Below are positions 5,723-48,900 of a stretch of DNA of 64,000 nt, piece after piece. The stretch spans positions 62,001 through 126,000 of the IMG/VR virus record IMGVR_UViG_3300030108_006260. One strand, written 5' to 3'. Under the pieces are notes generated by a model. That model was given only the letters and a program-made list of their open reading frames with translations. It was not told the DNA's origin and did no database searches. Both the position numbers and the translations under genes were made by a program. Numbering within the stretch: position 1 is the stretch's first letter; every line of letters starts with the position of its first letter.

Positions 5723-5789
5723 GGAGAATCGAACTCCGCTCTCCTGTGTGAAAAACAGGTATCCTAAACCGATAGACGATGGAGCCGTA

Positions 5790-6026
5790 TCAAGTACCAG
5801 TCACAACAGCGCGAGTACTTGCTACTTTAAAGAATACAGGAAGGTCTTCCCAGGTTTCGGGCATAATATCCTGATATTCTTCCCGCTCCTTCTTAGAAGA
5901 AGCATAAACTACGATGCCAAATGGAGGAGCACCCATAGGCGAACCATAGCCAAGAGTGTTACTTTGAAGAGCCTGCTGGAAGGTGGAGCGGAAGCGCTCT
6001 ACCTTATCAAGAGTTTGCTTATCCAT
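5790..6026 (-). CDS. hypothetical protein
   Basis: 78-aa ORF in co-directional gene order. Confidence 0.55.
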   Translation of the reverse strand: MDKQTLDKVERFRSTFQQALQSNTLGYGSPMGAPPFGIVVYASSKKEREEYQDIMPETWEDLPVFFKVASTRAVVTGT

Positions 6027-6065
6027 TTACTATAAAATCCTTGGGTTGTAACTAGTGTGAACTAG

Positions 6066-6231: not shown

Positions 6232-7230
6232 TCAGTGACCAGATCCCTTTTTCTTATACATTTCAAAGTCACTTTTTCTAAGAAGTGCATCTACAGTTGT
6301 AGCCTGTGCAGGGTAGGAAGCAGATCCGATACTTACGCTCATACAGTGTTCTTCTCCTCCTACATTAAAAGGACAACTCATAGATGAGTGAATACGTTCT
6401 CGTACAGATAAAGCGTAGTCGTCTGACACAATCCCTGAAACCAAAACTATGAATTCGTCTCCGCCATACCTACACACAAAATCTTCCGAGCGAACAGCAG
6501 CACATAAGCGATCTGCTACCTCAAATAGAAGGTCATCCCCAGCGTCGTGACCCCACTCATCATTTACGGCCTTGAACTTATTTAAGTCACAAAAGAAAAT
6601 AGAAAATGGTGATTCAGATTCTATTAAAATAGACATGTGGTCAAGTAAAGCAGTCCTGTTGGCAAGTCCTGTAAGCTGGTCAAAGTAGGCCAAATGGCGA
6701 AGATTATCTTCCTTATTCTTTCGCTCCTTAAGTACTAATATTTTCTGGTATAGAATACGATACGCGTCGTAAGATTTAGGCAAGTAGCCGTGGGCGTAAG
6801 TTCTAAGCAAGCCAGTCACTAACTCCGGATCTTCTGATCCCGAGAACAGCAAAATAGCAGATTCAGGGGCTTCCTCTGCCAGTGACCTAAGTAATGGAAT
6901 ACTTATAGTGTCTAGAGCATGAATATCAGTTATTATTACGTCTACACATTCCTTATCAAGGAAATCCAGTGCAGATGAGAACGAGTGAACCGCTTTCAAA
7001 GAGTTACAAAGCGGTGAAAGATGCTCCCTAATTAGGAGAATGTCAGTAGGATCGTCTTCTATAAGTAGAACGTTAAGACTTCTTTCAGGCGTGGGAGGTA
7101 CGCTTCTGGAACAAAGATCTAGACTTACAAGAAGGTTCTTCTTTTTCTTACGCCTATAGTCGTCAGAGGATGGCAAGTGATTTATTCTCCTATCACATAT
7201 ATAGGGTGCAATTATCATAAAGTAAATCAC
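6232..7230 (-). CDS. response-regulator diguanylate cyclase (REC-GGDEF, WspR/PleD-like)
   Basis: REC: VLLIEDD, DVIITD (phosphoacceptor Asp), YLPK. GGDEF: DQLTGLANR, DLNKFKAVNDEWGHDAGD, RSED I-site five residues before RYGGDEF, SVSIG. Confidence 0.93.
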   Translation of the reverse strand: MIYFMIIAPYICDRRINHLPSSDDYRRKKKKNLLVSLDLCSRSVPPTPERSLNVLLIEDDPTDILLIREHLSPLCNSLKAVHSFSSALDFLDKECVDVIITDIHALDTISIPLLRSLAEEAPESAILLFSGSEDPELVTGLLRTYAHGYLPKSYDAYRILYQKILVLKERKNKEDNLRHLAYFDQLTGLANRTALLDHMSILIESESPFSIFFCDLNKFKAVNDEWGHDAGDDLLFEVADRLCAAVRSEDFVCRYGGDEFIVLVSGIVSDDYALSVRERIHSSMSCPFNVGGEEHCMSVSIGSASYPAQATTVDALLRKSDFEMYKKKGSGH

Positions 7231-8917: not shown

Positions 8918-9169
8918 ATGCATCATAAAAGAACTAAAGTATTATCTACTTGTATGATTTCTCCGGATGCAAAACCAGAACTAGTAAGGCTCCTAAATAC
9001 GTACCTAGAAACGAACGAGAGTGATAAAAGAGTTCGTCTCTGCAAACTAATGGGATGCAGAGACGAACTCATCACAAGGTGGGCTAAGGGGGAATCAAGA
9101 CCAGACGGTGTAAACTATAGATACCTAGTTGGAATTCTCAGAACAGAAATAGAGCGAGAAAAAGCCTAG
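8918..9169 (+). CDS. small XRE-like helix-turn-helix protein
   Basis: RLCKLMGCRDELITRWAKGESRP resembles the XRE HTH pattern (lA..lG.s...isrWE.G...P). Confidence 0.6.
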   Translation: MHHKRTKVLSTCMISPDAKPELVRLLNTYLETNESDKRVRLCKLMGCRDELITRWAKGESRPDGVNYRYLVGILRTEIEREKA

Positions 9170-9693
9170 TCCTGTTCAAGCTCTCCGTGCCAGTAAGTCC
9201 AGTTTACCCACTGCTCAGGAAGAGACATGTGAGGTTCAAGCCTAAATACTATAGCAGGAAGGTACTTGGGCTTAATTGGAACCTTTCGTAGCTTCATTCC
9301 TGCTTGTTCAGGCGTCTTACTTCCCTTGCGGTCGTTGCAAGGATAGCAACACATGACTATGTTCTCCCAGTTGGTAGCTCCTCCTCTAGAACGCGGAACT
9401 ACGTGGTCGTAGGTGAGTTTCTTAAGCGGAAGAGAATCACCACAGTACTGACATGAGTAGTCGTCCCTCAGTGCTACGTTTACCCTACTGAACCTTATGG
9501 GTCGCTTCTTCCTGCGCACTTTACGAAGTAGACGCACTACGGCAGGCATCTTGATTGTAATGGACACAGACCTAATATCCTCGTCATACTCCTCAAGGAT
9601 CTCGATCTTGTCCTCAAAAAACATGCAAATAGCCCTCTGCCAAGAAATGACGCGGTGAGGCTGGTAGGACTGATCTAATACTAAGGTACGCAT
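9166..9693 (-). CDS. HNH endonuclease (McrA-like bacterial family)
   Basis: TLVLDQSYQP N-terminus; CQYCG...TYDHVVPRSRGG...WENIVMCCYPCNDRKG. Confidence 0.92.
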   Translation of the reverse strand: MRTLVLDQSYQPHRVISWQRAICMFFEDKIEILEEYDEDIRSVSITIKMPAVVRLLRKVRRKKRPIRFSRVNVALRDDYSCQYCGDSLPLKKLTYDHVVPRSRGGATNWENIVMCCYPCNDRKGSKTPEQAGMKLRKVPIKPKYLPAIVFRLEPHMSLPEQWVNWTYWHGELEQD

Positions 9694-9723: not shown

Positions 9724-11724
9724 TTATGGTTTTATTTGATGAGGAAATCCAAGGTAGTATCCTTGACCTAGAGTAACTCCTAGGCTCAGAAGAACTTTAA
9801 TGTCCTCTTCCGAGTTTACGCCTTCTGCAATGCAGTAAGCTCCTTGGGAGTCAACAGCGGCCACTAACCTAGACAACCTTTCCTTTTTCCATGGAGTAGA
9901 AGAAACATTCTCCACCCATATGCGATCTAGCTTTACAACATCAGGAGCTAGAACGATTACTGCGTTTATGGATGCATAGCCTGACCCCAAGTCATCCATG
10001 GCTAACTTTATTCCGTACTTTCGTGCTGTATTTCGTACATCGATATAGTTAGAATAACTTTCCAGAACTTGCTTCTCGCTAAGCTCAAGGCACACATTCA
10101 TACCTTCAAGAGAAGAAAGAAATTCTTCTGTAAGAGACCCGAAAGTAGCGGGGTAGAGATTCACAGAAGCATGCATAAGACCCTCTTTTTTGGCTGCCCC
10201 TATACAAGTGTCTAATGCTATCAAATCTACCTTATTCAGGATACCGGCTGAAGAAGCCGACCTGAACAGTATGTCGGGGTTGGTGAATACCTTATGACGA
10301 ACAAGATATTCTCCCCCAATAACTTCTCTCGTATTCAAATCAACAATAGGCTGTACTACTGCATAGTACAAAGAAGGGTCGAGTAGGCTCTCCTCCGTCT
10401 CAGAACCAGGGTAGTCATATGGAGTACCTATTACAACTCTATTTTTACCCGATGCCTTTGCTTTCAACAAGTGAGGAGAAGAGAGCCTGATAAGGTCATC
10501 AATACTTGTAATGTCGGGTGTAAGTTCTATAAGAGCAGCACTGGCCGTGATGGGAAGTTCGTGCTCTTCTTGCCTTATGACCTTCTCAGATAGTCTAGAG
10601 GTGAAAGCAGTACACATCAACTCTGCCTGCGCAAGATTATTGGCAAGGAACAGTACTAGGAATTCATCCCCTCCTATCCTAGAAACCCACGCAGGTCTTC
10701 CCATAACAGAACGAAGACACTCAGCTGTGTCTCGTAGAACCCTGTCACCTCCCGCTGTTCCAAGTAAATTATTAAGTTTCTTGAATCCATCCAGGTCCAG
10801 CAGCAGAGACCATCCCCTCTGTGGAGAGGCAGTAACAAGACCATGAAGCTGGTCTAAAGCGTTAGCCAGTCCTGCCCGGTTTAGGGCCTTTGTCAGGGGG
10901 TCTATGTGAACCATGTGCTCCAGCCTGGACCTCATGGATTTTATCTTTTTTAGAGAAGATTCTGCCTCACTAGCCTGGGCAGACACTCTTTGTATGTAGA
11001 ATATGGATATGCCTACAGCAATAGAAAGAGCGGAACCAAAAGAGAACAGAACAAAAACAAGACTTGTTTTAACGCCAGAGGACAGTAGAGCTATACTGAA
11101 GGCTAGAACTATGGATAGAGAGGCGAAGGGTACAATGTAATGAAATCCTTTGTACTCGTTCCTACTTCTTATCCAGTAAGACGCAGTAGAGTAAATAGAG
11201 ACCAAAAAGAAGTTAGTAGCAGTAGGCAAGGACATCTCATAGATGCCAGGCACCCAACTTCGGTCCCCTACAAGATATCCCAAAAGAGATGAAGTTGAAA
11301 TTGCTAAAACTAAAACATATGATGTGGAAGAAAAAACGAACTTCTTACTTATGCGTAAAATGTGAGCTAACCCCATAAGCACAAAGCCTACTGAGGTTAG
11401 AGGTGCTACCTTACTTCCTATGCCAGAAATATATATGAACCCATCTCCCTGTACAAGAGTATAAAACAGGGATAGAACACCTAATCCTACTGAAAGATAG
11501 GCCCCTACGTACGAGGATGGATTCCTTAAACTATAAACTAATACCAGTAATCCAATTGCAGTAACAGGGTGAGTTGTAGCACCTTGGCCAACAAATGCCA
11601 AAAGATAGCTAATACCAAACACCCACCCCAACAAGGTCCCCAAAGAGGTTAGTGCAACATACAACTGAACTACTGTGGCGACCTTACTCAGTAGATTTTC
11701 AAAATGTGTAGTCTCTTTATCCAC
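9724..11724 (-). CDS. membrane-anchored GGDEF-EAL c-di-GMP cyclase/phosphodiesterase
   Basis: About 7 TM segments; DPLTKALNR, DLDGFKKLNN, RIGGDEF; EAL domain with QPIVDL, EYLVR, SVNL, LELSE, DDLGSGY, VKLD, AEGV. Confidence 0.92.
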   Translation of the reverse strand: MDKETTHFENLLSKVATVVQLYVALTSLGTLLGWVFGISYLLAFVGQGATTHPVTAIGLLVLVYSLRNPSSYVGAYLSVGLGVLSLFYTLVQGDGFIYISGIGSKVAPLTSVGFVLMGLAHILRISKKFVFSSTSYVLVLAISTSSLLGYLVGDRSWVPGIYEMSLPTATNFFLVSIYSTASYWIRSRNEYKGFHYIVPFASLSIVLAFSIALLSSGVKTSLVFVLFSFGSALSIAVGISIFYIQRVSAQASEAESSLKKIKSMRSRLEHMVHIDPLTKALNRAGLANALDQLHGLVTASPQRGWSLLLDLDGFKKLNNLLGTAGGDRVLRDTAECLRSVMGRPAWVSRIGGDEFLVLFLANNLAQAELMCTAFTSRLSEKVIRQEEHELPITASAALIELTPDITSIDDLIRLSSPHLLKAKASGKNRVVIGTPYDYPGSETEESLLDPSLYYAVVQPIVDLNTREVIGGEYLVRHKVFTNPDILFRSASSAGILNKVDLIALDTCIGAAKKEGLMHASVNLYPATFGSLTEEFLSSLEGMNVCLELSEKQVLESYSNYIDVRNTARKYGIKLAMDDLGSGYASINAVIVLAPDVVKLDRIWVENVSSTPWKKERLSRLVAAVDSQGAYCIAEGVNSEEDIKVLLSLGVTLGQGYYLGFPHQIKP

Positions 11725-11744
11725 AAAATGAAAATAACAAATTA

Positions 11745-11981
11745 ATAGTCAAAGTATGCTGCTCTCCAACCTCCGCACAACTAGATATTTGAAAAAAGGC
11801 CTTATTCTCAAAATCTAAACTAGATCCCGCATGCACCTGCCCTACAGATGACACACCCTGCCGGATGTGCAAGTAGGGAGCCCCTCATTATTGATGGGTG
11901 GGAATCGAACCCTGAGTCCAGGGTGCAGTGGTCAGTTCGGCTAAAAACCCTGCCAAGGGCAGAGCAGCATACTTTGACTAT
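11745..11981. ncRNA. unassigned structured element closed by a perfect 21-bp inverted repeat
   Basis: ATAGTCAAAGTATGCTGCTCT (11745-11765) is the exact reverse complement of 11961-11981; internal hairpins; no ORF. Confidence 0.55.
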
Positions 11982-11998
11982 CAAAAGTTTATAAATAT

Positions 11999-12072
11999 TG
12001 GTACGGGATACTGGATTCGAACCAGTGTCTCAGCCTTGTAAGGGCCGTGCTAAACCACTCAGCTAATCCCGC
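11999..12072 (-). tRNA. tRNA-Val(TAC)
   Basis: Loop CTTACAA, T-arm GGTTCGAATCC, CCA. Confidence 0.95.
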
Positions 12073-12098
12073 TCTTGTATTTCTTCTTTTACAGAATA

Positions 12099-12173
12099 GG
12101 CGGAGGTAGAAGGGATCGAACCTACGACGACCCAGTTTCGAAGACTGGCGCTCTTCCTCTGAGCTATACCTCC
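12099..12173 (-). tRNA. tRNA-Arg(TCG)
   Basis: CCAGT-CTTCGAA-ACTGG; 3' end reads GCCT (CCA not fully encoded). Confidence 0.9.
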
Positions 12174-12176
12174 AGA

Positions 12177-12320
12177 GCTTGTTACTACGTGTTTGCGATT
12201 AGTTTAGAAGGTAGCTACTCCTTCTGCGTAAGCAACTCTACTCGCCGCTCTCGTTGAGATCCCGAGTTCCACTGTGCCTAACCATTGACTAGTATGATCG
12301 GCACGAGTGTAGTAACAAAC
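12177..12320 (-). ncRNA. unassigned multibranch RNA between the two tRNA-Arg genes
   Basis: 12-bp closing stem GTTTGTTACTAC/GTAGTAACAAGC enclosing hairpins GTGCC/GGCAC, TCTC/GAGA and AGAAGG/CCTTCT. Confidence 0.45.
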
Positions 12321-12396
12321 TGGCAGGGGTGGCAGGGATCGAACCTGCGCAAACCCAGTTTCGTAGACTGGTGCTCTTCCTCTGAGCTACACCCCT
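12321..12396 (-). tRNA. tRNA-Arg(ACG)
   Basis: CCAGT-CTACGAA-ACTGG, CCA. Confidence 0.95.
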
Positions 12397-12397
12397 G

Positions 12398-12468
12398 TGG
12401 AGTGGCGAGAAGGAATCAAACCTTCCTTAGCAGGGTTGCAACCTGCTTCGTTCTCAGAACATCACCAC
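12398..12468 (-). tRNA. tRNA-Cys(GCA), atypical D-arm and T-loop
   Basis: GCAGG-TTGCAAC-CCTGC, U73 discriminator, CCA; T-loop TTTGATT. Confidence 0.8.
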
Positions 12469-12469
12469 A

Positions 12470-12585
12470 AATCGCCACAAGTAGCACCTCCCGAGCAAGG
12501 TCCAATTCTACTTGTGACTTCCCGTCTCTCCGGGCTGTCACCTGCTTTTTCCATCCAACGGCCGCTGAGGGTTCGCGGGGATGCC
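12470..12585 (-). ncRNA. unassigned three-hairpin spacer RNA
   Basis: CATCC/GGATG + CCGC/GCGG; GTGAC-AGCCCGGAGAGACGGGAA-GTCAC; CAAGTAG/CTACTTG with inner ACCT/AGGT. Confidence 0.35.
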
Positions 12586-12660
12586 TGGAGCCCTAGCCCA
12601 GAATCGAACTGGGGTTTCATCTTTACCAAAGATGGGTACTAACCATTGTACTACTAGGGC
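12586..12660 (-). tRNA. tRNA-Thr(GGT)
   Basis: CATCT-TTGGTAA-AGATG, CCA. Confidence 0.95.
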
Positions 12661-12664
12661 TATT

Positions 12665-12750
12665 TGGCGGAAGGTTGAGGAGTCGAACCCCTACGCGTTA
12701 ACGCACCTCCGGGTTCAAACCGGATTGCCAACCACTTAGCGGAACCTTCC
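12665..12750 (-). tRNA. tRNA-Ser(TGA)
   Basis: TCCGG-TTTGAAC-CCGGA, long variable arm, CCA. Confidence 0.95.
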
Positions 12751-12751
12751 T

Positions 12752-12826
12752 TGGTGGGTCCGGAGGGACTTGAACCCTCAACCGTCAGGTTAAAAGCCTG
12801 CTGCACTACCATTGTGCTACGGACCC
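12752..12826 (-). tRNA. tRNA-Lys(TTT)
   Basis: Loop CTTTTAA, CCA. Confidence 0.95.
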
Positions 12827-12857
12827 GGTTGGGCCTTTTATAGTCGGCCAGGACTAG

Positions 12858-12930
12858 TGGAACCAGAGGGGATCGAACCCTCAGCCTCCTGCGTGCAAGG
12901 CAGGCGCTCTCCCAGTTGAGCTATGGCCCC
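12858..12930 (-). tRNA. tRNA-Ala(TGC)
   Basis: CCTGC-CTTGCAC-GCAGG, G3.U70, A73; followed by CTA rather than CCA. Confidence 0.93.
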
Positions 12931-12982
12931 TTTTTTAGAACGTATCACGTTTTCAATGAGAGTCAAGAAGATTGACTCAAAA

Positions 12983-13056
12983 TGGTACCGGGTGGGAGAA
13001 TCGAACTCCCGTATTGAGGACCAAAATCTCATGTCCTACCATTAGACGAACCCGGA
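12983..13056 (-). tRNA. tRNA-Gln(TTG)
   Basis: Loop TTTTGGT, CCA; 1:72 is a U.U mismatch. Confidence 0.92.
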
Positions 13057-13057
13057 A

Positions 13058-13144
13058 TGGCGGAAGGAACTGGAGTCGAACCAGATACCACGAGTGTACC
13101 AACGGCTTAGCAGGCCGCGCTAGTCCCAGACTAGGTTTCCTTCC
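13058..13144 (-). tRNA. tRNA-Ser(GCT)
   Basis: GCGGC-CTGCTAA-GCCGT, variable arm, CCA. Confidence 0.93.
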
Positions 13145-13147
13145 ATT

Positions 13148-13222
13148 TGGAGCGCCTGGAGGGAGTTGAACCCTCGCTTCTTGCTTGGCAAGCAAACGTG
13201 CCACCACCAACACTTCAGGCGC
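13148..13222 (-). tRNA. tRNA-Gly(GCC)
   Basis: Loop TTGCCAA, U73, CCA. Confidence 0.92.
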
Positions 13223-13226
13223 AAAA

Positions 13227-13304
13227 TGGTGGGAATGGGGAGACTCGAACTCCCTATCTCACGGGCCACAACCGTGTGCTTCGACCACTTTAGCTTCAGT
13301 CCCC
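13227..13304 (-). tRNA. tRNA-His(GTG)
   Basis: CACGG-TTGTGGC-CCGTG, extra 5' G, CCA. Confidence 0.93.
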
Positions 13305-13322
13305 ATAAAGACACAATAGTGC

Positions 13323-13409
13323 CGGTGGAGCGTGAAGGAATCGAACCTCATAGTACATAGACACTCGGTTTACAGCCGAGGGCAGGTCCCAGCCTGCTAT
13401 TCACGCTCC
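13323..13409 (-). tRNA. tRNA-Tyr(GTA)
   Basis: CTCGG-CTGTAAA-CCGAG, variable arm; 3' end reads CCG. Confidence 0.9.
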
Positions 13410-14169: not shown

Positions 14170-14170
14170 T

Positions 14171-14248
14171 TGGTGGACAGTTACGGAGTCGAACCGTAGT
14201 CCTAGTGAGGTCTTTCGATTTAACACTAGTCGAACCCTTCTACTGCCC
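14171..14248 (-). ncRNA. tmRNA tRNA-like domain (TLD) without mRNA-like domain
   Basis: GGGCAGT-AGAAGGGTTCGA-CTAGTG-(16-nt loop)-CACTAG-GAC-TACGG-TTCGACT-CCGTA-ACTGTCC-A-CCA: G3.U70, A73, stemless D-loop ending GG-N-TTCGAC, GAC linker. Same layout as the 5' and 3' ends of bacterial tmRNA. Confidence 0.8.
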
Positions 14249-14250
14249 GT

Positions 14251-15738: not shown

Positions 15739-16725
15739 TTAGAAAGAATCCAACTGGGACTTGAAGAAGTCGCGTCCCAAGGTCATTACTTTCTTATTTA
15801 CATCCTTGTAAGTCAATCCACTCTCTTCTAAATCTAGAGTACATTCTTTTTGAATGTCGTTTGCGAGCCACTTTAGAAAGGTTCCTGTGGAGGTGACATC
15901 CAGAGGATGCCCTTCTTCTTTTAGAAAGAAGATTCCCTGCGCAAGGCGTGCCTTACTGACTGCGTACTTTACAAAGGCATCAACCGATTCCAGTTTTTCC
16001 GGAGACATCTGTGGACCCTTCTTCCGGGGTGCCACCATCTTGTGCTTTTCCCCTTTCGACTTGAAGGGCAGCACTGGATTTCCAAAGTGCTCCCACATAG
16101 GAGTCCATACAACTCCTTCTCCGGTTCCTCTGATCCCAAAGTTTTCGCCCCAGGGGCAACAATCTTCCACATTGGCAGTAATAGACATTACTTCTTCCAT
16201 GAAGGAAGATCTGCTTTCGCTACTGCTGAAGTCGACACGGAGTGTGTACGAAGGAACAGCTAGGATAGAGTGGATCAATCCAGGAGAGGTCACGATTGCG
16301 TCAAGTGCTGGAACAGGTACGAGAGGCTGTCCCTTCTCTACCTCTGCATGAACAGAGAAAAGAACCCACTGCCGCTCGGGTAGACTGTTTACAGCTACCC
16401 CTTTCTGGATTCCAGGGCCTACCCACTCCCCAAACAGAACAATGTCAAACTCTGGGTCGATGGAAAGTTCCCGTCGAACAGAATCCTCGATCTTACGAAT
16501 CGACTTTTCGTGCTTTGATACAAAGGTAGCAAAACCAAAAGAATCGTTTCGTTCCTTTGTACGAGACTGAGGGATTAGTTCGCTAGGCGTACATCGTACT
16601 CCCGCGTTCGTACCATGAAGCTTCACTGTTCCACGGTACGTAACAACACTACGTGGTAGCTGACCAGACTTGTCTAGGTACCTAGCTACCTGATAAAAAG
16701 AATCGATTGATGGAAACTTGTGCAT
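15739..16725 (-). CDS. ATP-dependent RNA ligase (Rnl2-like nucleotidyltransferase)
   Basis: Motif I VKLHGTN, III LFGEW, IIIa VLF, IV GEGVVW, V FKSK; AGGAG SD upstream. Confidence 0.88.
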   Translation of the reverse strand: MHKFPSIDSFYQVARYLDKSGQLPRSVVTYRGTVKLHGTNAGVRCTPSELIPQSRTKERNDSFGFATFVSKHEKSIRKIEDSVRRELSIDPEFDIVLFGEWVGPGIQKGVAVNSLPERQWVLFSVHAEVEKGQPLVPVPALDAIVTSPGLIHSILAVPSYTLRVDFSSSESRSSFMEEVMSITANVEDCCPWGENFGIRGTGEGVVWTPMWEHFGNPVLPFKSKGEKHKMVAPRKKGPQMSPEKLESVDAFVKYAVSKARLAQGIFFLKEEGHPLDVTSTGTFLKWLANDIQKECTLDLEESGLTYKDVNKKVMTLGRDFFKSQLDSF

Positions 16726-45901: not shown

Positions 45902-48900
45902 CTATACTGATTGACCGAAGAACTTACGGTCAACAGAGTATAGACCGAAGAGCCTCTTGATCGGGTATCTTCCATGCCAGAAATACTTGAAGTTATACAA
46001 CGTTCTCTGGTCCTTAGCTCGGAACACCTCTACGTCAGAGTTGGGATCGAGGGGACGGTCGTTACCTGCATCATCCTGGAAGGCTCCAATGATTCCGCGA
46101 GCAACAAGAGAGGCCAACTTTTCAACTAGGAAGCTCTGTATAATGGCCACACCTGCCTGCTCGGAAGGAGGAACAACACCAATAATAGCGCTGTCCATAG
46201 AGTCACGAATCTCTCGGGTAACAAACTGCTTCTGGTTGATAGCAACAGAAATCTCGTTGTTATCATCACTAGACCGGTCTACAGTAGTAGACTCTTCGAT
46301 ACGGAAAACAGGTGCGTCATCTGTACCTTGGTTACTAACCCAAATGATAGAAGCTGCGTTGAGCCTGAGTTCTTCGGGCTCCTCATACGTCTTCATAGAG
46401 TCAAACCCGAAGAGGTTCTTACGTAGAAGAGTCTCACCTGGATCATCGAACGAAGCATTTCGGCCAGCGATAGCCGCTGCAATGAAGGAACCGTCAAGTG
46501 TTACTTCAATAGCGGTTCCATCTGTTAGACTAATGGTCTTAGTAGCCTCAGTGTTTCCAACGAGGACACGAGTACCGTGTGCAGGGTTTTCTCCGAACAC
46601 CTGAAGGGTCCTCTGAGAAAGGTACACTAGGGTGCCTGGAATGTTCCCATCGCCTATCTGAGTCCCGATTGGTGTACCCACCCAGAGAGCACGTTCACCA
46701 CGCTCGAAGGGATCGTTCATCTTTTCGTTGTTCTCTAGGGATTTGGAAAGAGATGCAAAGCTGTTAAGAACAGTAATGTCAGTTAGATCTCTTACGTCCT
46801 CGGTTGCCTCTATAGCATTGTTGATGTCTAAAGTAGAGATAACTCCGTCACCGTCCGAGTCATATGCCTGGGAGAAGTAGGCTCCGAACGCATTGTTGTC
46901 GTTAAGGATAAGCTCAGCAGCAATGAGTAGGTCGTTAGTAGTAGCGGACGGACCCAGTAGGTCCTGTGCTTCCTCAAAAGAGAATACCTTCTGTGGGGTG
47001 TTGTACAGGCTGGCCTCGCGAACGATGTTTGCCGTTACGTTGTACAGCGCGGAAGGAGAAGGCTCTCTACCGATATGCTCGTAGTAAACCTCAATCGGAT
47101 TGGTAGGAGGGGTAGCAAAAGCAATGTAGGGCTGATTAGGGAAAGTGGAGAAGGACGAAATCAGCGCGCCAGTAACAGTGTCTCGTATGTATAGAACCTG
47201 TGTGGCAATGTTATCAAGGACGATGTATCTAAGGCCCACTGTCCCTGTAATGACGCCTAAAGTGTCAGTAAACAGCTGAGTAGGAATGTCGATTATTTCA
47301 CTCTCTCGGGTAGTGAGAGACCAGTCGATTACATCCTCATTAACAGTGCTAAATGTCCACTGATCATTGATAGCAAAACGGTTTGCAAGAGTAGACTGAG
47401 AACCTACGTTACGTAGCCATAGAGTTACGTTACCAGGAAGAGGAAGGCTTCCAGCGGGTCCTACACTCTGAACCAAATCAAACCCGCCCTCAGGGGTTCC
47501 TGTCTGATATTGAACTGTTACGGTGTTAGCGCTTCCAGAAGTACCTACAGCAGAAACATCAATAACATAATCCCTGTCGTCCTTTGCCGTAACAAAGAGA
47601 CGGTCTGCCGTGGCCTGGAACCAGAAGGCATCGTTTACGGTAAAGTTACCTGTACCGAAGTCAAAGGATAAGAGAACTCCGTTTCCAAGCGAAATGTTTT
47701 CGTTGGTAGTAGTTGCCTCATTGATAGTAAAGGTACGACTAGAACCGTTGTACTCAAGGTCAGGTACTTCTCCCCATGCTTGCCATACGAAACTTGCTGT
47801 ACGAGAGCCGGGAGCACCTGCTGAAGCCGTGCAGACCAGTAGATATCTACGATTACGGGTACCCGTATAGACGGCGTCTGCACGCAGGCTTGGAACACCA
47901 GTTCCTGCTGCACCCGATGCCATAGAAACGGACCATGAAGGCGACCCGGTACGGGTAAGAACACCATCTCCTACAGCAGAGAAGGAAGCATGTTGTTCAG
48001 TGTTTCCAAGGGCTGAGTCAAGCTCAATGGATGCAGGGCCTAGTCCCGTAACCTCGAAGACCTCACCTCCTACAATAGAGGAAGAATCGTCGTCTAGAAT
48101 AAATTCTATAAGGTCACCTGTAACATCTGTGAACTCCACAGTAGTAACAGACCCTACTCCTCCAGTAAACTCTACGTCCGTTCCCAATCCAGCAGAAACG
48201 TTAGTACTGTGGAGAGGAAGCTGGGGCTGAGTACCTACTGCGGTTGGTCCCATAAGAGCGCTTGCTGCAATAGAAGCACCCGCAGCCACTTCTGGGAACG
48301 AAGCACCCGAATCCTGTATCACAGTAATAGTAGCAGGGATGTCTCCTGCCGCAGGCGCTCCTAGAGTAACTCTATATCGTCTGTTGTAGGGGTGAGCGGA
48401 ACCAGAGGTTGATGCAACTCCCATAGCAGCAGGGGATACGACTCCAGACACGGGCCTGACGTACCCAGCGGAGGTGAATCCAGCAATAACCATGGGGGCT
48501 GTAGGAAACTGGGCGCTAGCTAGACCTAGGATTGCATTAGCCGTTCCCGCGTTTACCTCAACCGCAGAAATACCAGGGTCATTGCTGTCTGACCGGATAG
48601 TAATGAAGTCGGTGGGACTCTCCACAGCCAATCCATCGGATGAAATAACTGCGTTTATGGCGGCAGCTACTAGTGCAGCAGTGGTATCTGTAGAGGCAAA
48701 GGTAACGGAGTAGTTTGTTCCATTGATGTCAAGGTCCAAAACCTCACCGCCGACAAATGCGTAGGGAGCAGCGTTTGTTGTGGTAACCTGTGCGGGCTCA
48801 AACCCTACAGAAGTAGAAGAGGAGAACGCGTTAGACAGATCTGGCTCAGGATCTGTAGTAGCAACAGGCAAGTAATAGTGAACAAACTCCTCGTAAAGCT

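What the first reader, a model, noticed from the sequence alone, without database searches (positions are those of the whole stretch)
11745..11981. 237-nt element closed by a perfect 21-bp inverted repeat, just upstream of the GGDEF-EAL gene
Seen on the minus strand: IR arm, unpaired G, short hairpins (CCCT-TGGC-AGGG; ACCCTG-GACT-CAGGGT), a T-loop-like GGGTTCGATTCCC, CCCTAC/GTAGGG pairing, a long AT-rich hairpin (TAGATTTTGAG...TTCAAATATCTA), then the second arm. The CAGGGT segment occurs three times, allowing alternative pairings. Inference, unresolved: (a) a retron msr-msd-like RNA with no RT in this window, possibly a decoy or trans-templated; (b) a 6S- or Y-like stable RNA released from the tRNA transcript; (c) a cis switch for the c-di-GMP gene; (d) a MITE, since TA flanks both inner arms.
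Basis: partly seen in the sequence, partly recalled or inferred. Interest (0 to 1): 0.6.

Follow-up and report, generated by a model that had tools for sequence, protein, structure and literature searches.

The report
Orphan phage small RNA after tRNAs
A 237-base noncoding element closed by a perfect 21-bp stem sits at the end of the tRNA gene array of a ~340-kb marine T4-like phage; its core turns up in an ocean RNA library, so it is most likely a small stable phage RNA of unknown family, not a retron or a jumping element.

Summary
Perfect 21-bp inverted arms (11745-11765 and 11961-11981; 24 nt at 96%) enclose 195 nt. This is the only such repeat in the 240-kb record.

The host genome is a marine T4-like jumbo phage of about 340 kb. 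The element lies 14 nt after tRNA-Val, the last tRNA of this block of the array. It ends 17-20 nt before a membrane GGDEF-EAL gene.

It is noncoding: a natural strain carries a 1-nt insertion that would break the two small reading frames spanning it. No Rfam family matches beyond a 13-nt T-loop.

There is no reverse transcriptase, Ro60/TROVE protein, recombinase or RNase III in the 240 kb. No second copy exists in the phage or in viral, metagenome or prokaryote collections. Ten independent assemblies show one orientation.

One marine metatranscriptome holds a 152-nt contig exactly on 11778-11920 and nothing else of this phage across 2.6 kb.

Best reading (about 0.45): a discrete stable small RNA made from the tRNA-array transcript, with the long stem acting as an rRNA-style processing stalk. 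The nearest analogue is T4 RNAC/RNAD. Its module order recalls YrlA Y RNAs, but membership fails.

Retron, MITE and inverton readings are not supported. A cis role for the downstream gene stays open. There are no diverged homologues, so covariation cannot be tested.

The parts
11961..11984 (-). 5' arm of the terminal stem (perfect 21 nt = 11961-11981; extended to 24 nt with one G.U)
   Evidence: identical in all 10 assemblies of two strains
11947..11960 (-). Hairpin 1 (GCCCU-UGGC-AGGGU) followed by a U5 run (11943-11947); weak terminator-like
   Evidence: the terminator scan count equals the shuffle expectation, so this is only a lead
11936..11941 (-). GCCGAA in a single-stranded stretch; matches the GNCGAA part of the YrlA Rsr-binding motif but not the full GNCGAAN0-1G
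   Evidence: sequence; motif definition from PMC4201824
11909..11924 (-). Hairpin 2 ('V-like', ACCCUG-GACU-CAGGGU); its 3' strand overlaps the T-loop motif, so the two pairings exclude each other
   Evidence: the strain variant changes only the loop (C>U at 11916)
11900..11912 (-). tRNA/tmRNA-type T-loop motif GGGUUCGAUUCCC with only a 3-bp stem
   Evidence: the only Rfam match: tmRNA / beta_tmRNA, 13 nt, E 0.36 / 8.5
11882..11898 (-). Capped 'acceptor-like' hairpin (CCC-A-UCA / AUAA / UGA-GGG), directly 3' of the T-loop
   Evidence: the variant strain has one extra G in the G-run
11840..11878 (-). Long hairpin CCCUAC...GUAGGG with an inner 7-bp helix capped by GGCA ('D-like' position)
   Evidence: variant changes U>C at 11855 (turns an A-U pair into A.C) and U>G at 11848 (internal loop)
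11781..11823 (-). AU-rich hairpin
11742..11765 (-). 3' arm of the terminal stem (perfect 21 nt = 11745-11765)
11778..11920 (.). Stretch present as a 152-nt contig (k-mer depth 8, no mismatches) in marine metatranscriptome run X15; strand not determinable from contigs
   Evidence: table 8; the rest of 10800-13400 has no contig of this phage in that run
11999..12072 (-). tRNA-Val(UAC), last tRNA of this block of the array, 14 nt upstream of the element
9724..11724 (-). Downstream gene: multi-pass membrane N-terminus plus GGDEF plus EAL (666 aa)
   Evidence: nearest non-self relatives are 34% identical bacterial proteins

Best explanation
The element is a gene for a small, structured, noncoding phage RNA at the distal end of the tRNA array. 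It is transcribed on the minus strand with, or just after, the tRNAs. The 21-24-bp terminal stem forms in the precursor. It acts as a processing stalk, a double-stranded RNase III-type substrate like the stalks that flank rRNAs. This frees the RNA from the upstream tRNA precursor and from the downstream GGDEF-EAL message. Trimming then leaves a stable core of about 150 nt, roughly 11772-11924. The core carries a tRNA-derived T-loop followed by a capped acceptor-like hairpin, so it probably engages a tRNA-binding protein, for example as a mimic or decoy. Shown: the repeat, its uniqueness, its noncoding nature, its position and strand context, and the presence of its core in an RNA library. Inferred: the strand of the RNA, RNase III processing, the mature ends and the tRNA-mimic function.
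For: (1) Position. The element starts 14 nt after tRNA-Val on the strand that carries 27 tRNAs and nearly all genes of the window. T4, whose replication genes resemble this phage's, has two small stable RNAs of unknown role, RNAD and RNAC, at the same place in its tRNA cluster. RNAC carries a T-arm (PMC3014915, PMC9697503).
(2) RNA. Metatranscriptome X15 holds a 152-nt contig at depth 8 exactly on 11778-11920. It has no other contig of this phage across 10800-13400, which argues against DNA carry-over. The contig stops 37 nt and 7 nt inside the arms when its unaligned tips are counted, as expected if the stalk is removed.
(3) Noncoding. A natural strain has a 1-nt insertion plus 4 substitutions in the element, and the insertion would frameshift the two small ORFs that span it.
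(4) Substitution pattern. One change is in a hairpin loop, one in an internal loop, one turns G.U into G-C, one breaks an A-U pair, and none falls in the arms.
(5) Strand. The minus-strand fold is 14 kcal/mol better than the plus-strand fold and uses nine G.U pairs, including the single mismatch of the 24-nt arms. These would be A.C on the other strand.
(6) tRNA ancestry. The 13-nt T-loop motif is a tRNA/tmRNA signature.
(7) A non-homologous 168-nt element closed by a 16-bp repeat sits 4 nt after tRNA-Pro in the closest relative, G001. A 147-nt spacer closed by a 12-bp stem lies between two tRNA-Arg genes here.
Against: The interior folds only marginally better than shuffled sequence (z -1.8; 10 of 200 shuffles as good). 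No diverged homologue exists. The nearest phage, G001, lacks the element, and a covariance model of the core finds nothing, so there is no covariation support at all. Logan contigs give neither strand nor true ends, and only one RNA run holds the stretch; a second RNA run from a sample that holds the phage DNA showed nothing. The element diverges between strains at about 2%, no slower than the tRNA region (about 1.2%) and faster than the neighbouring CDS (about 0.45%). In the MFE fold the T-stem does not form, because its GGG pairs in hairpin 2. No RNase III is encoded in the 240 kb, so a host enzyme must be assumed.
Confidence: 0.45

Rival explanations
1. Cis-acting leader or processing site. 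The element belongs to the GGDEF-EAL transcript. The stem, cut by RNase III or acting as a stabilising 5' structure, sets the 5' end and stability or translation of that mRNA. The alternative CCCU/AGGG pairings might act as a switch. The RNA seen in the library would be the stable leader fragment.
For: The 3' arm ends 17-20 nt before the start codon, which has no visible Shine-Dalgarno sequence. There are three interchangeable CAGGGU segments. Leader fragments often outlast their mRNAs, which fits the contig not entering the CDS. G001 lacks both the element and the GGDEF-EAL gene, so the two may have arrived together.
Against: No riboswitch or leader family matches, c-di-GMP-I and -II included. 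The stem does not overlap the start region. No terminator or antiterminator logic is evident, and the terminator-like hairpin lies at the 5' end, not the 3' end. The closest GGDEF-EAL relatives are 34% identical bacterial genes, so no conserved leader can be compared.
Confidence: 0.2
2. A DNA-level relic without a function of its own. It would be an inverted duplication or a decayed single-copy MITE or tRNA pseudogene fragment, merely co-transcribed with its neighbours.
For: The arms are perfect, which is typical of young DNA repeats. The interior evolves at least as fast as flanking noncoding DNA and barely beats shuffles in folding. The T-loop could be a leftover of a tRNA gene. Unrelated partial tRNA 3' ends with the same 19-mer are common in metagenomes as integration scars.
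Against: No other copy exists anywhere: own record, IMG/VR, JGI metagenomes, 185,579 prokaryote species. No transposase or recombinase is present. The arms are kept intact in both strains. An RNA library holds this stretch selectively, while the flanking tRNA spacers and CDS are absent.
Confidence: 0.17
3. Invertible DNA switch (inverton). The 21-bp repeats would be recombinase sites flanking a 195-bp promoter-bearing segment that turns the GGDEF-EAL gene on or off.
For: The geometry is textbook for invertons: perfect 21-bp repeats, a roughly 200-bp insert, directly upstream of a gene.
Against: All 10 independent assemblies from different samples and two strains have the same orientation, and none breaks at the repeat. 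No joints or strand changes appear in the runs laid. No serine or tyrosine recombinase is found in 240 kb. No sigma-70-type promoter lies inside. The RNA contig stays inside the segment.
Confidence: 0.05
4. A Y-RNA-like (YrlA-type) tRNA mimic that tethers a Ro60/Rsr-type or other RNA-repair protein. This is a more specific version of the best explanation.
For: The module order matches YrlA as described in PMC4201824: terminal stem, GNCGAA-like motif, V hairpin, T-loop, capped acceptor-like hairpin, D-position hairpin, terminal stem. The phage carries RNA-repair genes: an RNA ligase in the tRNA array and a 2',5'-ligase/LigT-like protein.
Against: The Rfam YrlA model scores only tRNA dimers in this genome, not the element. 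No TROVE protein is found in 240 kb. The T-stem is only 3 bp. There is no canonical D-arm. GCCGAA is followed by CUG, so the full motif fails and it is not in the terminal stem.
Confidence: 0.06
5. Retron msr-msd-like RNA, with or without its own RT.
For: Flanking repeats with a G right after the 5' arm, internal hairpins and a hairpin before the 3' arm look superficially like a1/a2, the branching G, msr and msd.
Against: There is no RVT_1 match in 240 kb. The ORF immediately downstream, where retron RTs sit, is a membrane GGDEF-EAL protein. No retron ncRNA family matched.
Confidence: 0.02

Closest known systems
Phage T4 RNAC and RNAD (species 1 and species 2 stable RNAs)
   Same: Small noncoding RNAs encoded at the distal end of a T4-type phage tRNA cluster, on the tRNA strand, next to a homing-endonuclease gene. 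RNAC carries a tRNA-type T-arm. Their function has been unknown for 50 years (PMC3014915; PMC9697503).
   Different: There is no sequence similarity beyond the T-loop. T4 RNAC has its T-arm at the 3' end next to an acceptor-like pairing of its own ends. Here the T-loop is internal, the acceptor-like helix is capped, and a 21-bp stem closes the whole element.
YrlA-type bacterial and phage Y RNAs (Rfam RF02553)
   Same: Ends paired in a long stem; internal tRNA-like module in the permuted order V, T, capped acceptor-like stem, D; a GNCGAA-like motif 5' of the module (PMC4201824).
   Different: It fails the covariance model. No Ro60/TROVE gene lies nearby. It has a 3-bp T-stem and no canonical D-arm, is about twice as long, and its stem is perfect without the bulged Ro-binding helix.
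Circularly permuted (two-piece) tmRNA genes
   Same: Topology: precursor ends paired, a T-arm in the 5' third, then the acceptor 3' strand, a short linker and the acceptor 5' strand. The only Rfam hits are the T-arm of tmRNA and beta_tmRNA.
   Different: There is no 7-bp acceptor stem with G3.U70, no encoded CCA, no tag reading frame and no pseudoknots. ARAGORN finds no tmRNA even at relaxed thresholds. The RNA contig spans the linker uncut.
RNase III processing stalks of rRNA operons and phage T7 early transcripts
   Same: Long complementary sequences flank a stable RNA within a polycistronic transcript that also holds tRNAs. About 21-24 bp of perfect duplex is a canonical RNase III substrate (established knowledge, not tested here).
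   Different: The enclosed RNA is about 195 nt rather than an rRNA. Cleavage has not been observed.
MITEs such as Correia or Nezha elements
   Same: About 240 bp with perfect terminal inverted repeats and TA at the ends.
   Different: It is single-copy everywhere searched, with no parent IS and no target-site duplication beyond the palindromic TA.

Membership tests
Retron msr-msd ncRNA | Reverse transcriptase gene directly downstream on the same strand | tested here: not met
   The downstream ORF is a membrane GGDEF-EAL protein. No PF00078 match in the 240-kb record. About 100 kb of the phage was not searchable.
Retron msr-msd ncRNA | a1/a2 inverted repeats with a branching G after the 5' repeat | tested here: met
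   21-bp arms, unpaired G at 11960. This feature is not specific.
Retron msr-msd ncRNA | msDNA produced | not testable with these tools
   Needs a gel or sequencing of extracted nucleic acid.
YrlA / bacterial Y RNA (RF02553) | Match to the family covariance model | tested here: not met
   The model hits only adjacent-tRNA pairs (best 28.3 bits, gathering score 69). Nothing at G000 73742-73984 at E<=10.
YrlA / bacterial Y RNA (RF02553) | Ro60/Rsr (TROVE) gene within about 4 kb on the same strand | tested here: not met
   No PF05731 match in 240 kb, while the controls ring.
YrlA / bacterial Y RNA (RF02553) | GNCGAAN0-1G motif near the 5' end; module order V-T-AS-D | tested here: inconclusive
   GCCGAA is present but followed by CUG. 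The order of hairpins matches, but the T-stem has 3 bp and the D-arm is not canonical.
MITE | Multiple copies sharing terminal inverted repeats | tested here: not met
   One copy in the own record. None in IMG/VR. 27 scattered single 17-mer hits in 596 Gb, against about 69 expected by chance, and none paired.
tmRNA (standard or permuted) | 7-bp acceptor stem with G3.U70, a tag reading frame, detection by ARAGORN or Rfam | tested here: not met
   ARAGORN -m finds none even at ps80. Rfam matches only 13 nt of the T-arm.
Invertible promoter (inverton) | Both orientations present in a population, and a site-specific recombinase | tested here: not met
   10 of 10 assemblies show the same orientation. 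No PF00239 or PF00589 match. Raw reads were not examined.
c-di-GMP or other riboswitch | Match to a riboswitch aptamer model | tested here: not met
   No Rfam family at E<=10 on the 267-nt stretch.
Phage tRNA-cluster stable RNAs (T4 RNAC/RNAD type; a functional grouping, not a homology family) | Noncoding; on the tRNA strand within or at the end of a phage tRNA cluster; accumulates as a discrete RNA | tested here: inconclusive
   Position and noncoding nature are met. Selective presence in one RNA library is seen. Discrete ends and strand are not shown.

The most novel reading that the evidence does not exclude
The element is a circularly permuted gene for a long tRNA-like RNA. The T-arm and acceptor 3' strand precede the acceptor 5' strand, and the precursor ends are clamped by the 21-bp stem, as in two-piece tmRNA or YrlA. 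A lytic marine jumbo phage would use it as a tRNA mimic, either as a decoy for host tRNA-cleaving defence nucleases or as a tether for an RNA-repair or decay enzyme. That would make it a new class of phage counter-defence RNA.
Probability: 0.1. Interest if true: 0.75.

Novelty: new variant of a known kind. Interest (0 to 1): 0.42.

Why it matters
Large phages carry tRNA arrays. Since T4 it has been known that such arrays can also hold small stable RNAs whose purpose is still unknown. This is a second, unrelated example, with direct environmental RNA evidence, in an abundant ocean phage found in 6 studies. It has an unusual design: a T-loop and a capped acceptor-like helix inside a perfect 21-bp clamp. 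This suggests that tRNA-cluster riders are a recurring phage invention rather than a T4 oddity. If the RNA mimics tRNA, it bears on the current question of how phages answer tRNA-targeting host defences. If instead it is only a processing stalk or leader, it shows how a phage separates a tRNA precursor from an acquired c-di-GMP signalling gene.

Tried and rejected
(1) Rfam at permissive thresholds on 7.5 kb and on the 267-nt stretch alone: only a 13-nt T-loop match.
(2) ARAGORN with tmRNA, intron and lowered-score options: nothing credible in the element.
(3) Homologue hunting all failed or returned only the same phage. I tried blastn against 50,697 phage records; exact arm and core patterns in IMG/VR; and a core 19-mer in JGI metagenomes, which returned the same phage plus unrelated tRNA-Cys 3' integration scars. 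I also tried BLAST and nhmmer against the closest relative G001, and a covariance model of the core against G001, 5 other jumbo-phage loci and the window.
(4) Neighbour-guided search. The GGDEF-EAL protein has no relatives between its own 90%-identity cluster and 34% identity. The RNA ligase has none between 99% and 47%. No intermediate phages exist to supply covariation.
(5) T4 late-promoter motif TATAAATA: not enriched in this genome, so a near-match upstream of the element means nothing.
(6) Sigma-70 promoter and terminator scan: at shuffle expectation.
(7) attP idea (partial tRNA 3' end as an integration site): no integrase, and the 3' 'acceptor' would start a tRNA with UUGAUGG. The two long contigs are rotated copies of one circle, so the phage is not integrated.
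(8) CsrA-sponge idea: GGA motifs are not enriched (by eye; four in 243 nt).
(9) The Glu-Leu tRNA gap also pairs end to end, but it holds a called 78-aa gene, so I dropped it as a parallel.
(10) Searching the last ~100 kb of the phage (beyond the 240-kb record) for RT, TROVE or recombinase genes was not possible.

Full report
**What is there**

The window is G000:C1:62001-126000 of a 240,443-bp IMG/VR record. On the minus strand it carries 27 tRNA genes. It also carries T4-type replication genes: both topoisomerase II subunits, a gp46/SbcC-like nuclease, a DNA polymerase and an RNA ligase.

The finding's repeat is real. The repeat finder returns one inverted pair, 11742-11765 / 11961-11984, 24 nt at 96%. 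The perfect core of 21 bp is 11745-11765 / 11961-11981, with 195 nt between the arms.

In my scan of the whole 240 kb it is the only inverted repeat of 14 nt or more with 80-500 nt spacing. Chance expectation for a 21-mer pair is about 2e-5.

The element begins 14 nt after tRNA-Val(UAC) (11999-12072). It ends 17-20 nt before a 666-aa ORF with a multi-pass membrane N-terminus, a GGDEF domain and an EAL domain.

**The genome around it**

The same phage occurs in marine metagenomes of six studies. It is present in Tara Oceans contigs of 340,538 bp (ENA) and 340,737 bp (JGI).

The JGI contig shares coordinates with G000, so G000 is its first 240 kb. The positions and strands of two genes show that the ENA contig is a rotated reverse complement of the JGI contig. 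I infer that the genome is circular or circularly permuted, about 340 kb and complete. The 'provirus' label is probably wrong.

The nearest relative in IMG/VR is G001, 388 kb. Its topoisomerase is 58% identical and most other proteins are 30-40% identical.

**It is noncoding and single-copy**

Seven assemblies are identical over 381 nt around the element. A second strain (L073-L075) differs by four substitutions and a 1-nt insertion, all in the 195-nt interior. The insertion would frameshift the two small ORFs that span it (11820-11984 minus, 11848-11994 plus).

Measured against the minus-strand MFE fold, the changes fall as follows:
- one in a hairpin loop (11916);
- one in an internal loop (11848);
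- one turns a G.U pair into G-C (11768);
- one turns an A-U pair into A.C (11855);
- the extra G lengthens a G-run in the acceptor-like hairpin.

The arms are untouched. With about 2% divergence that is expected 40% of the time by chance, so it proves little. Divergence in the element (about 2%) is no lower than in the tRNA region (about 1.2%). It is higher than in the GGDEF-EAL CDS (about 0.45%).

There is no second copy in the record, in IMG/VR or in JGI metagenomes (same phage only). The arm 17-mer occurs 27 times, always singly, in 596 Gb of prokaryote genomes, where about 69 chance hits are expected.

**RNA evidence**

Of 22 runs listed, one metatranscriptome (X15) held 6% of the sampled words of a 2.6-kb query. 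When laid, it has a 152-nt contig at depth 8. Bases 7-149 of that contig match 11778-11920 without mismatch.

No other contig of this phage lies anywhere in 10800-13400. The only other pieces are diverged tRNA-Ala fragments of other organisms.

DNA carry-over would have covered the flanks as well, so I take this as selective presence of the element's core in RNA. Contigs give no strand and no true ends, and depth is low. A second RNA run from a sample that holds the phage DNA showed nothing.

**Structure**

The full element folds at -105.3 kcal/mol on the minus strand (z -6.7) and -91.5 on the plus strand. Nearly all of the excess comes from the arms.

The interior alone gives z -1.8 (minus) and -1.1 (plus). 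The 153-nt part seen in RNA gives about -1.5 and -1.7.

The minus-strand fold uses nine G.U pairs, including the single mismatch of the 24-nt arms. This is mild evidence for that strand.

From 5' to 3' the modules are:
- the 5' arm;
- G, then hairpin 1 with a U5 run;
- a single-stranded stretch containing GCCGAA;
- hairpin 2;
- the T-loop motif;
- a capped 6-bp hairpin with one bulge;
- a long hairpin capped by GGCA;
- an AU-rich hairpin;
- the 3' arm.

The GGG of the T-loop motif can pair either in hairpin 2 or in a 3-bp T-stem. The MFE fold chooses hairpin 2.

**Tests of the named ideas**

*Retron.* There is no RVT_1 in 240 kb, and the downstream gene is not an RT.

*Y RNA.* The module order and a GNCGAA-like motif recall YrlA as described in PMC4201824. 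However, the YrlA model hits only tRNA dimers here, and no TROVE protein is found.

*tmRNA.* Only the 13-nt T-loop matches. ARAGORN finds nothing.

*MITE.* It is single-copy everywhere, as described above.

*Inverton.* The geometry fits. But all ten assemblies share one orientation and none breaks at the repeat. No resolvase or integrase is found, and the runs laid show no joints.

*Riboswitch.* No family matches.

*RNase III or CCA-adding enzyme of the phage's own.* Not found in 240 kb.

The last ~100 kb of the phage could not be searched.

**Analogues**

In T4, the tRNA cluster ends with tRNA-Arg, RNAD (119 nt) and RNAC (139 nt). The homing endonuclease segB lies inside the cluster, and RNAC ends in a perfect T-arm. 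Both RNAs are expressed, and their roles are unknown (PMC3014915, PMC9697503).

In G001, a 168-nt stretch closed by a 16-bp repeat lies 4 nt after tRNA-Pro. It shows no sequence similarity to this element. It sits next to an HNH endonuclease 65% identical to the one at 9166-9693 here.

In this window, the 147-nt spacer between the two tRNA-Arg genes is closed by a 12-bp stem.

Outside the window, the same phage has two roughly 130-140-nt tRNA-like RNAs with a 7-bp acceptor stem, a T-arm and an encoded CCA. Neither ARAGORN nor Rfam names them.

Unusual RNAs riding in tRNA clusters therefore seem to be a habit of this lineage.

**Most likely mechanism**

I favour a discrete small RNA made from the tRNA-array transcript. 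The perfect 21-24-bp stem forms in the precursor and serves as an RNase III-type processing stalk, as in rRNA operons. This detaches the RNA from the tRNA precursor and from the GGDEF-EAL message.

Cleavage in the single-stranded stretch after hairpin 1, together with 3' trimming, would remove the stalk. This would leave about 150 nt, which is the part seen in the RNA library.

The T-loop followed by a capped acceptor-like helix suggests contact with a tRNA-binding factor. That step is inference only.

Confidence in this reading is about 0.45. The main rivals are:
- a functionless DNA relic that is merely co-transcribed (0.17);
- an inverton (0.05), a true Y-RNA relative (0.06) and a retron (0.02), all less likely.

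**Novelty and limits**

No homologue exists in the collections searched, so covariation, the usual proof of a structured RNA, is unavailable. The interior's thermodynamic signal is weak, and the RNA evidence is one low-depth contig without strand information.

The element is best filed as a new variant of a known kind, the phage tRNA-cluster stable RNAs. It belongs to no described family.

Noticed in passing
window 14170-14250 (minus strand): An unannotated tRNA-like gene between tRNA-Asp and tRNA-Ile. It has a perfect T-arm (ACGG-UUCGACU-CCGU), a 7-bp pairing of its ends and an encoded CCACCA. It is missed by ARAGORN and by Rfam at E<=1.
   Followed up: partly
window 13328-13408 (minus strand): A probable class II tRNA-Tyr(GUA). 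ARAGORN misses it, and Rfam reports it only as a sub-threshold tRNA-Sec-like hit at 40.1 bits. It would fill the Tyr gap in the phage's tRNA set.
   Followed up: partly
window 12174-12320 (minus strand): The 147-nt spacer between tRNA-Arg(ACG) and tRNA-Arg(UCG) is closed by a 12-bp stem formed by its own ends and folds into several hairpins. It is identical in both strains. It may be a second rider RNA or a self-insulating spacer.
   Followed up: partly
window 9166-9693 (minus strand); L030:5001-5806; L032; L050: The HNH endonuclease is 65% identical to one in G001, against about 37% for most shared proteins. The G001 copy lies beside tRNA-Pro and a 168-nt element closed by a 16-bp repeat. Relatives also sit at the edge of tRNA arrays or a tmRNA gene in two other jumbo phages. 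It looks like a mobile endonuclease that tracks tRNA clusters, as segB does in T4.
   Followed up: partly
L112:1586-1723 and L112:1899-2027 (G000 46196-46333 and 46509-46637, minus strand; outside the window): Two roughly 130-140-nt tRNA-like RNAs. Each has a 7-bp acceptor stem, a roughly 95-nt body, a shared CUUACAAGCAA motif, a T-arm and an encoded 3' CC(A). Neither ARAGORN nor Rfam names them. Their architecture resembles T4 RNAC.
   Followed up: partly
window 6232-7230 (minus strand) and 9724-11724 (minus strand): The phage carries two c-di-GMP genes within 5 kb: a response-regulator-GGDEF protein and the membrane GGDEF-EAL protein. Two matrixin-like metallopeptidase ORFs lie between them. 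This is an unusual signalling cargo for a T4-like phage.
   Followed up: no
whole record G000; L067, L076, L132: The ENA 340,538-bp contig is a rotated reverse complement of the JGI 340,737-bp contig, whose first 240 kb is G000. The phage genome is therefore circular or circularly permuted and about 340 kb. The 'provirus, 62% complete' label is probably a trimming artefact.
   Followed up: partly
window 5787-6065 (minus strand): The gap between tRNA-Glu and tRNA-Leu holds a called 78-aa gene of unknown function embedded in the tRNA array.
   Followed up: no
window 15739-16725 (minus strand); L132:6943-8337: An RNA ligase (PF09414) sits inside the tRNA array, and a 2',5'-RNA-ligase/LigT-like protein lies elsewhere in the genome. 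Together they suggest a tRNA-repair toolkit, as in T4.
   Followed up: no
L115-L119, L123, L125-L127, L130: In unrelated soil and other metagenome contigs the same 19-mer (T-arm plus CCC) recurs as a partial 3' end of tRNA-Cys, preceded by a conserved AAAATCA(A/G)TAACTT motif. On two contigs (L118, L126) an intact tRNA-Cys lies on the same contig. These look like attachment-site scars of an integrative element family.
   Followed up: no
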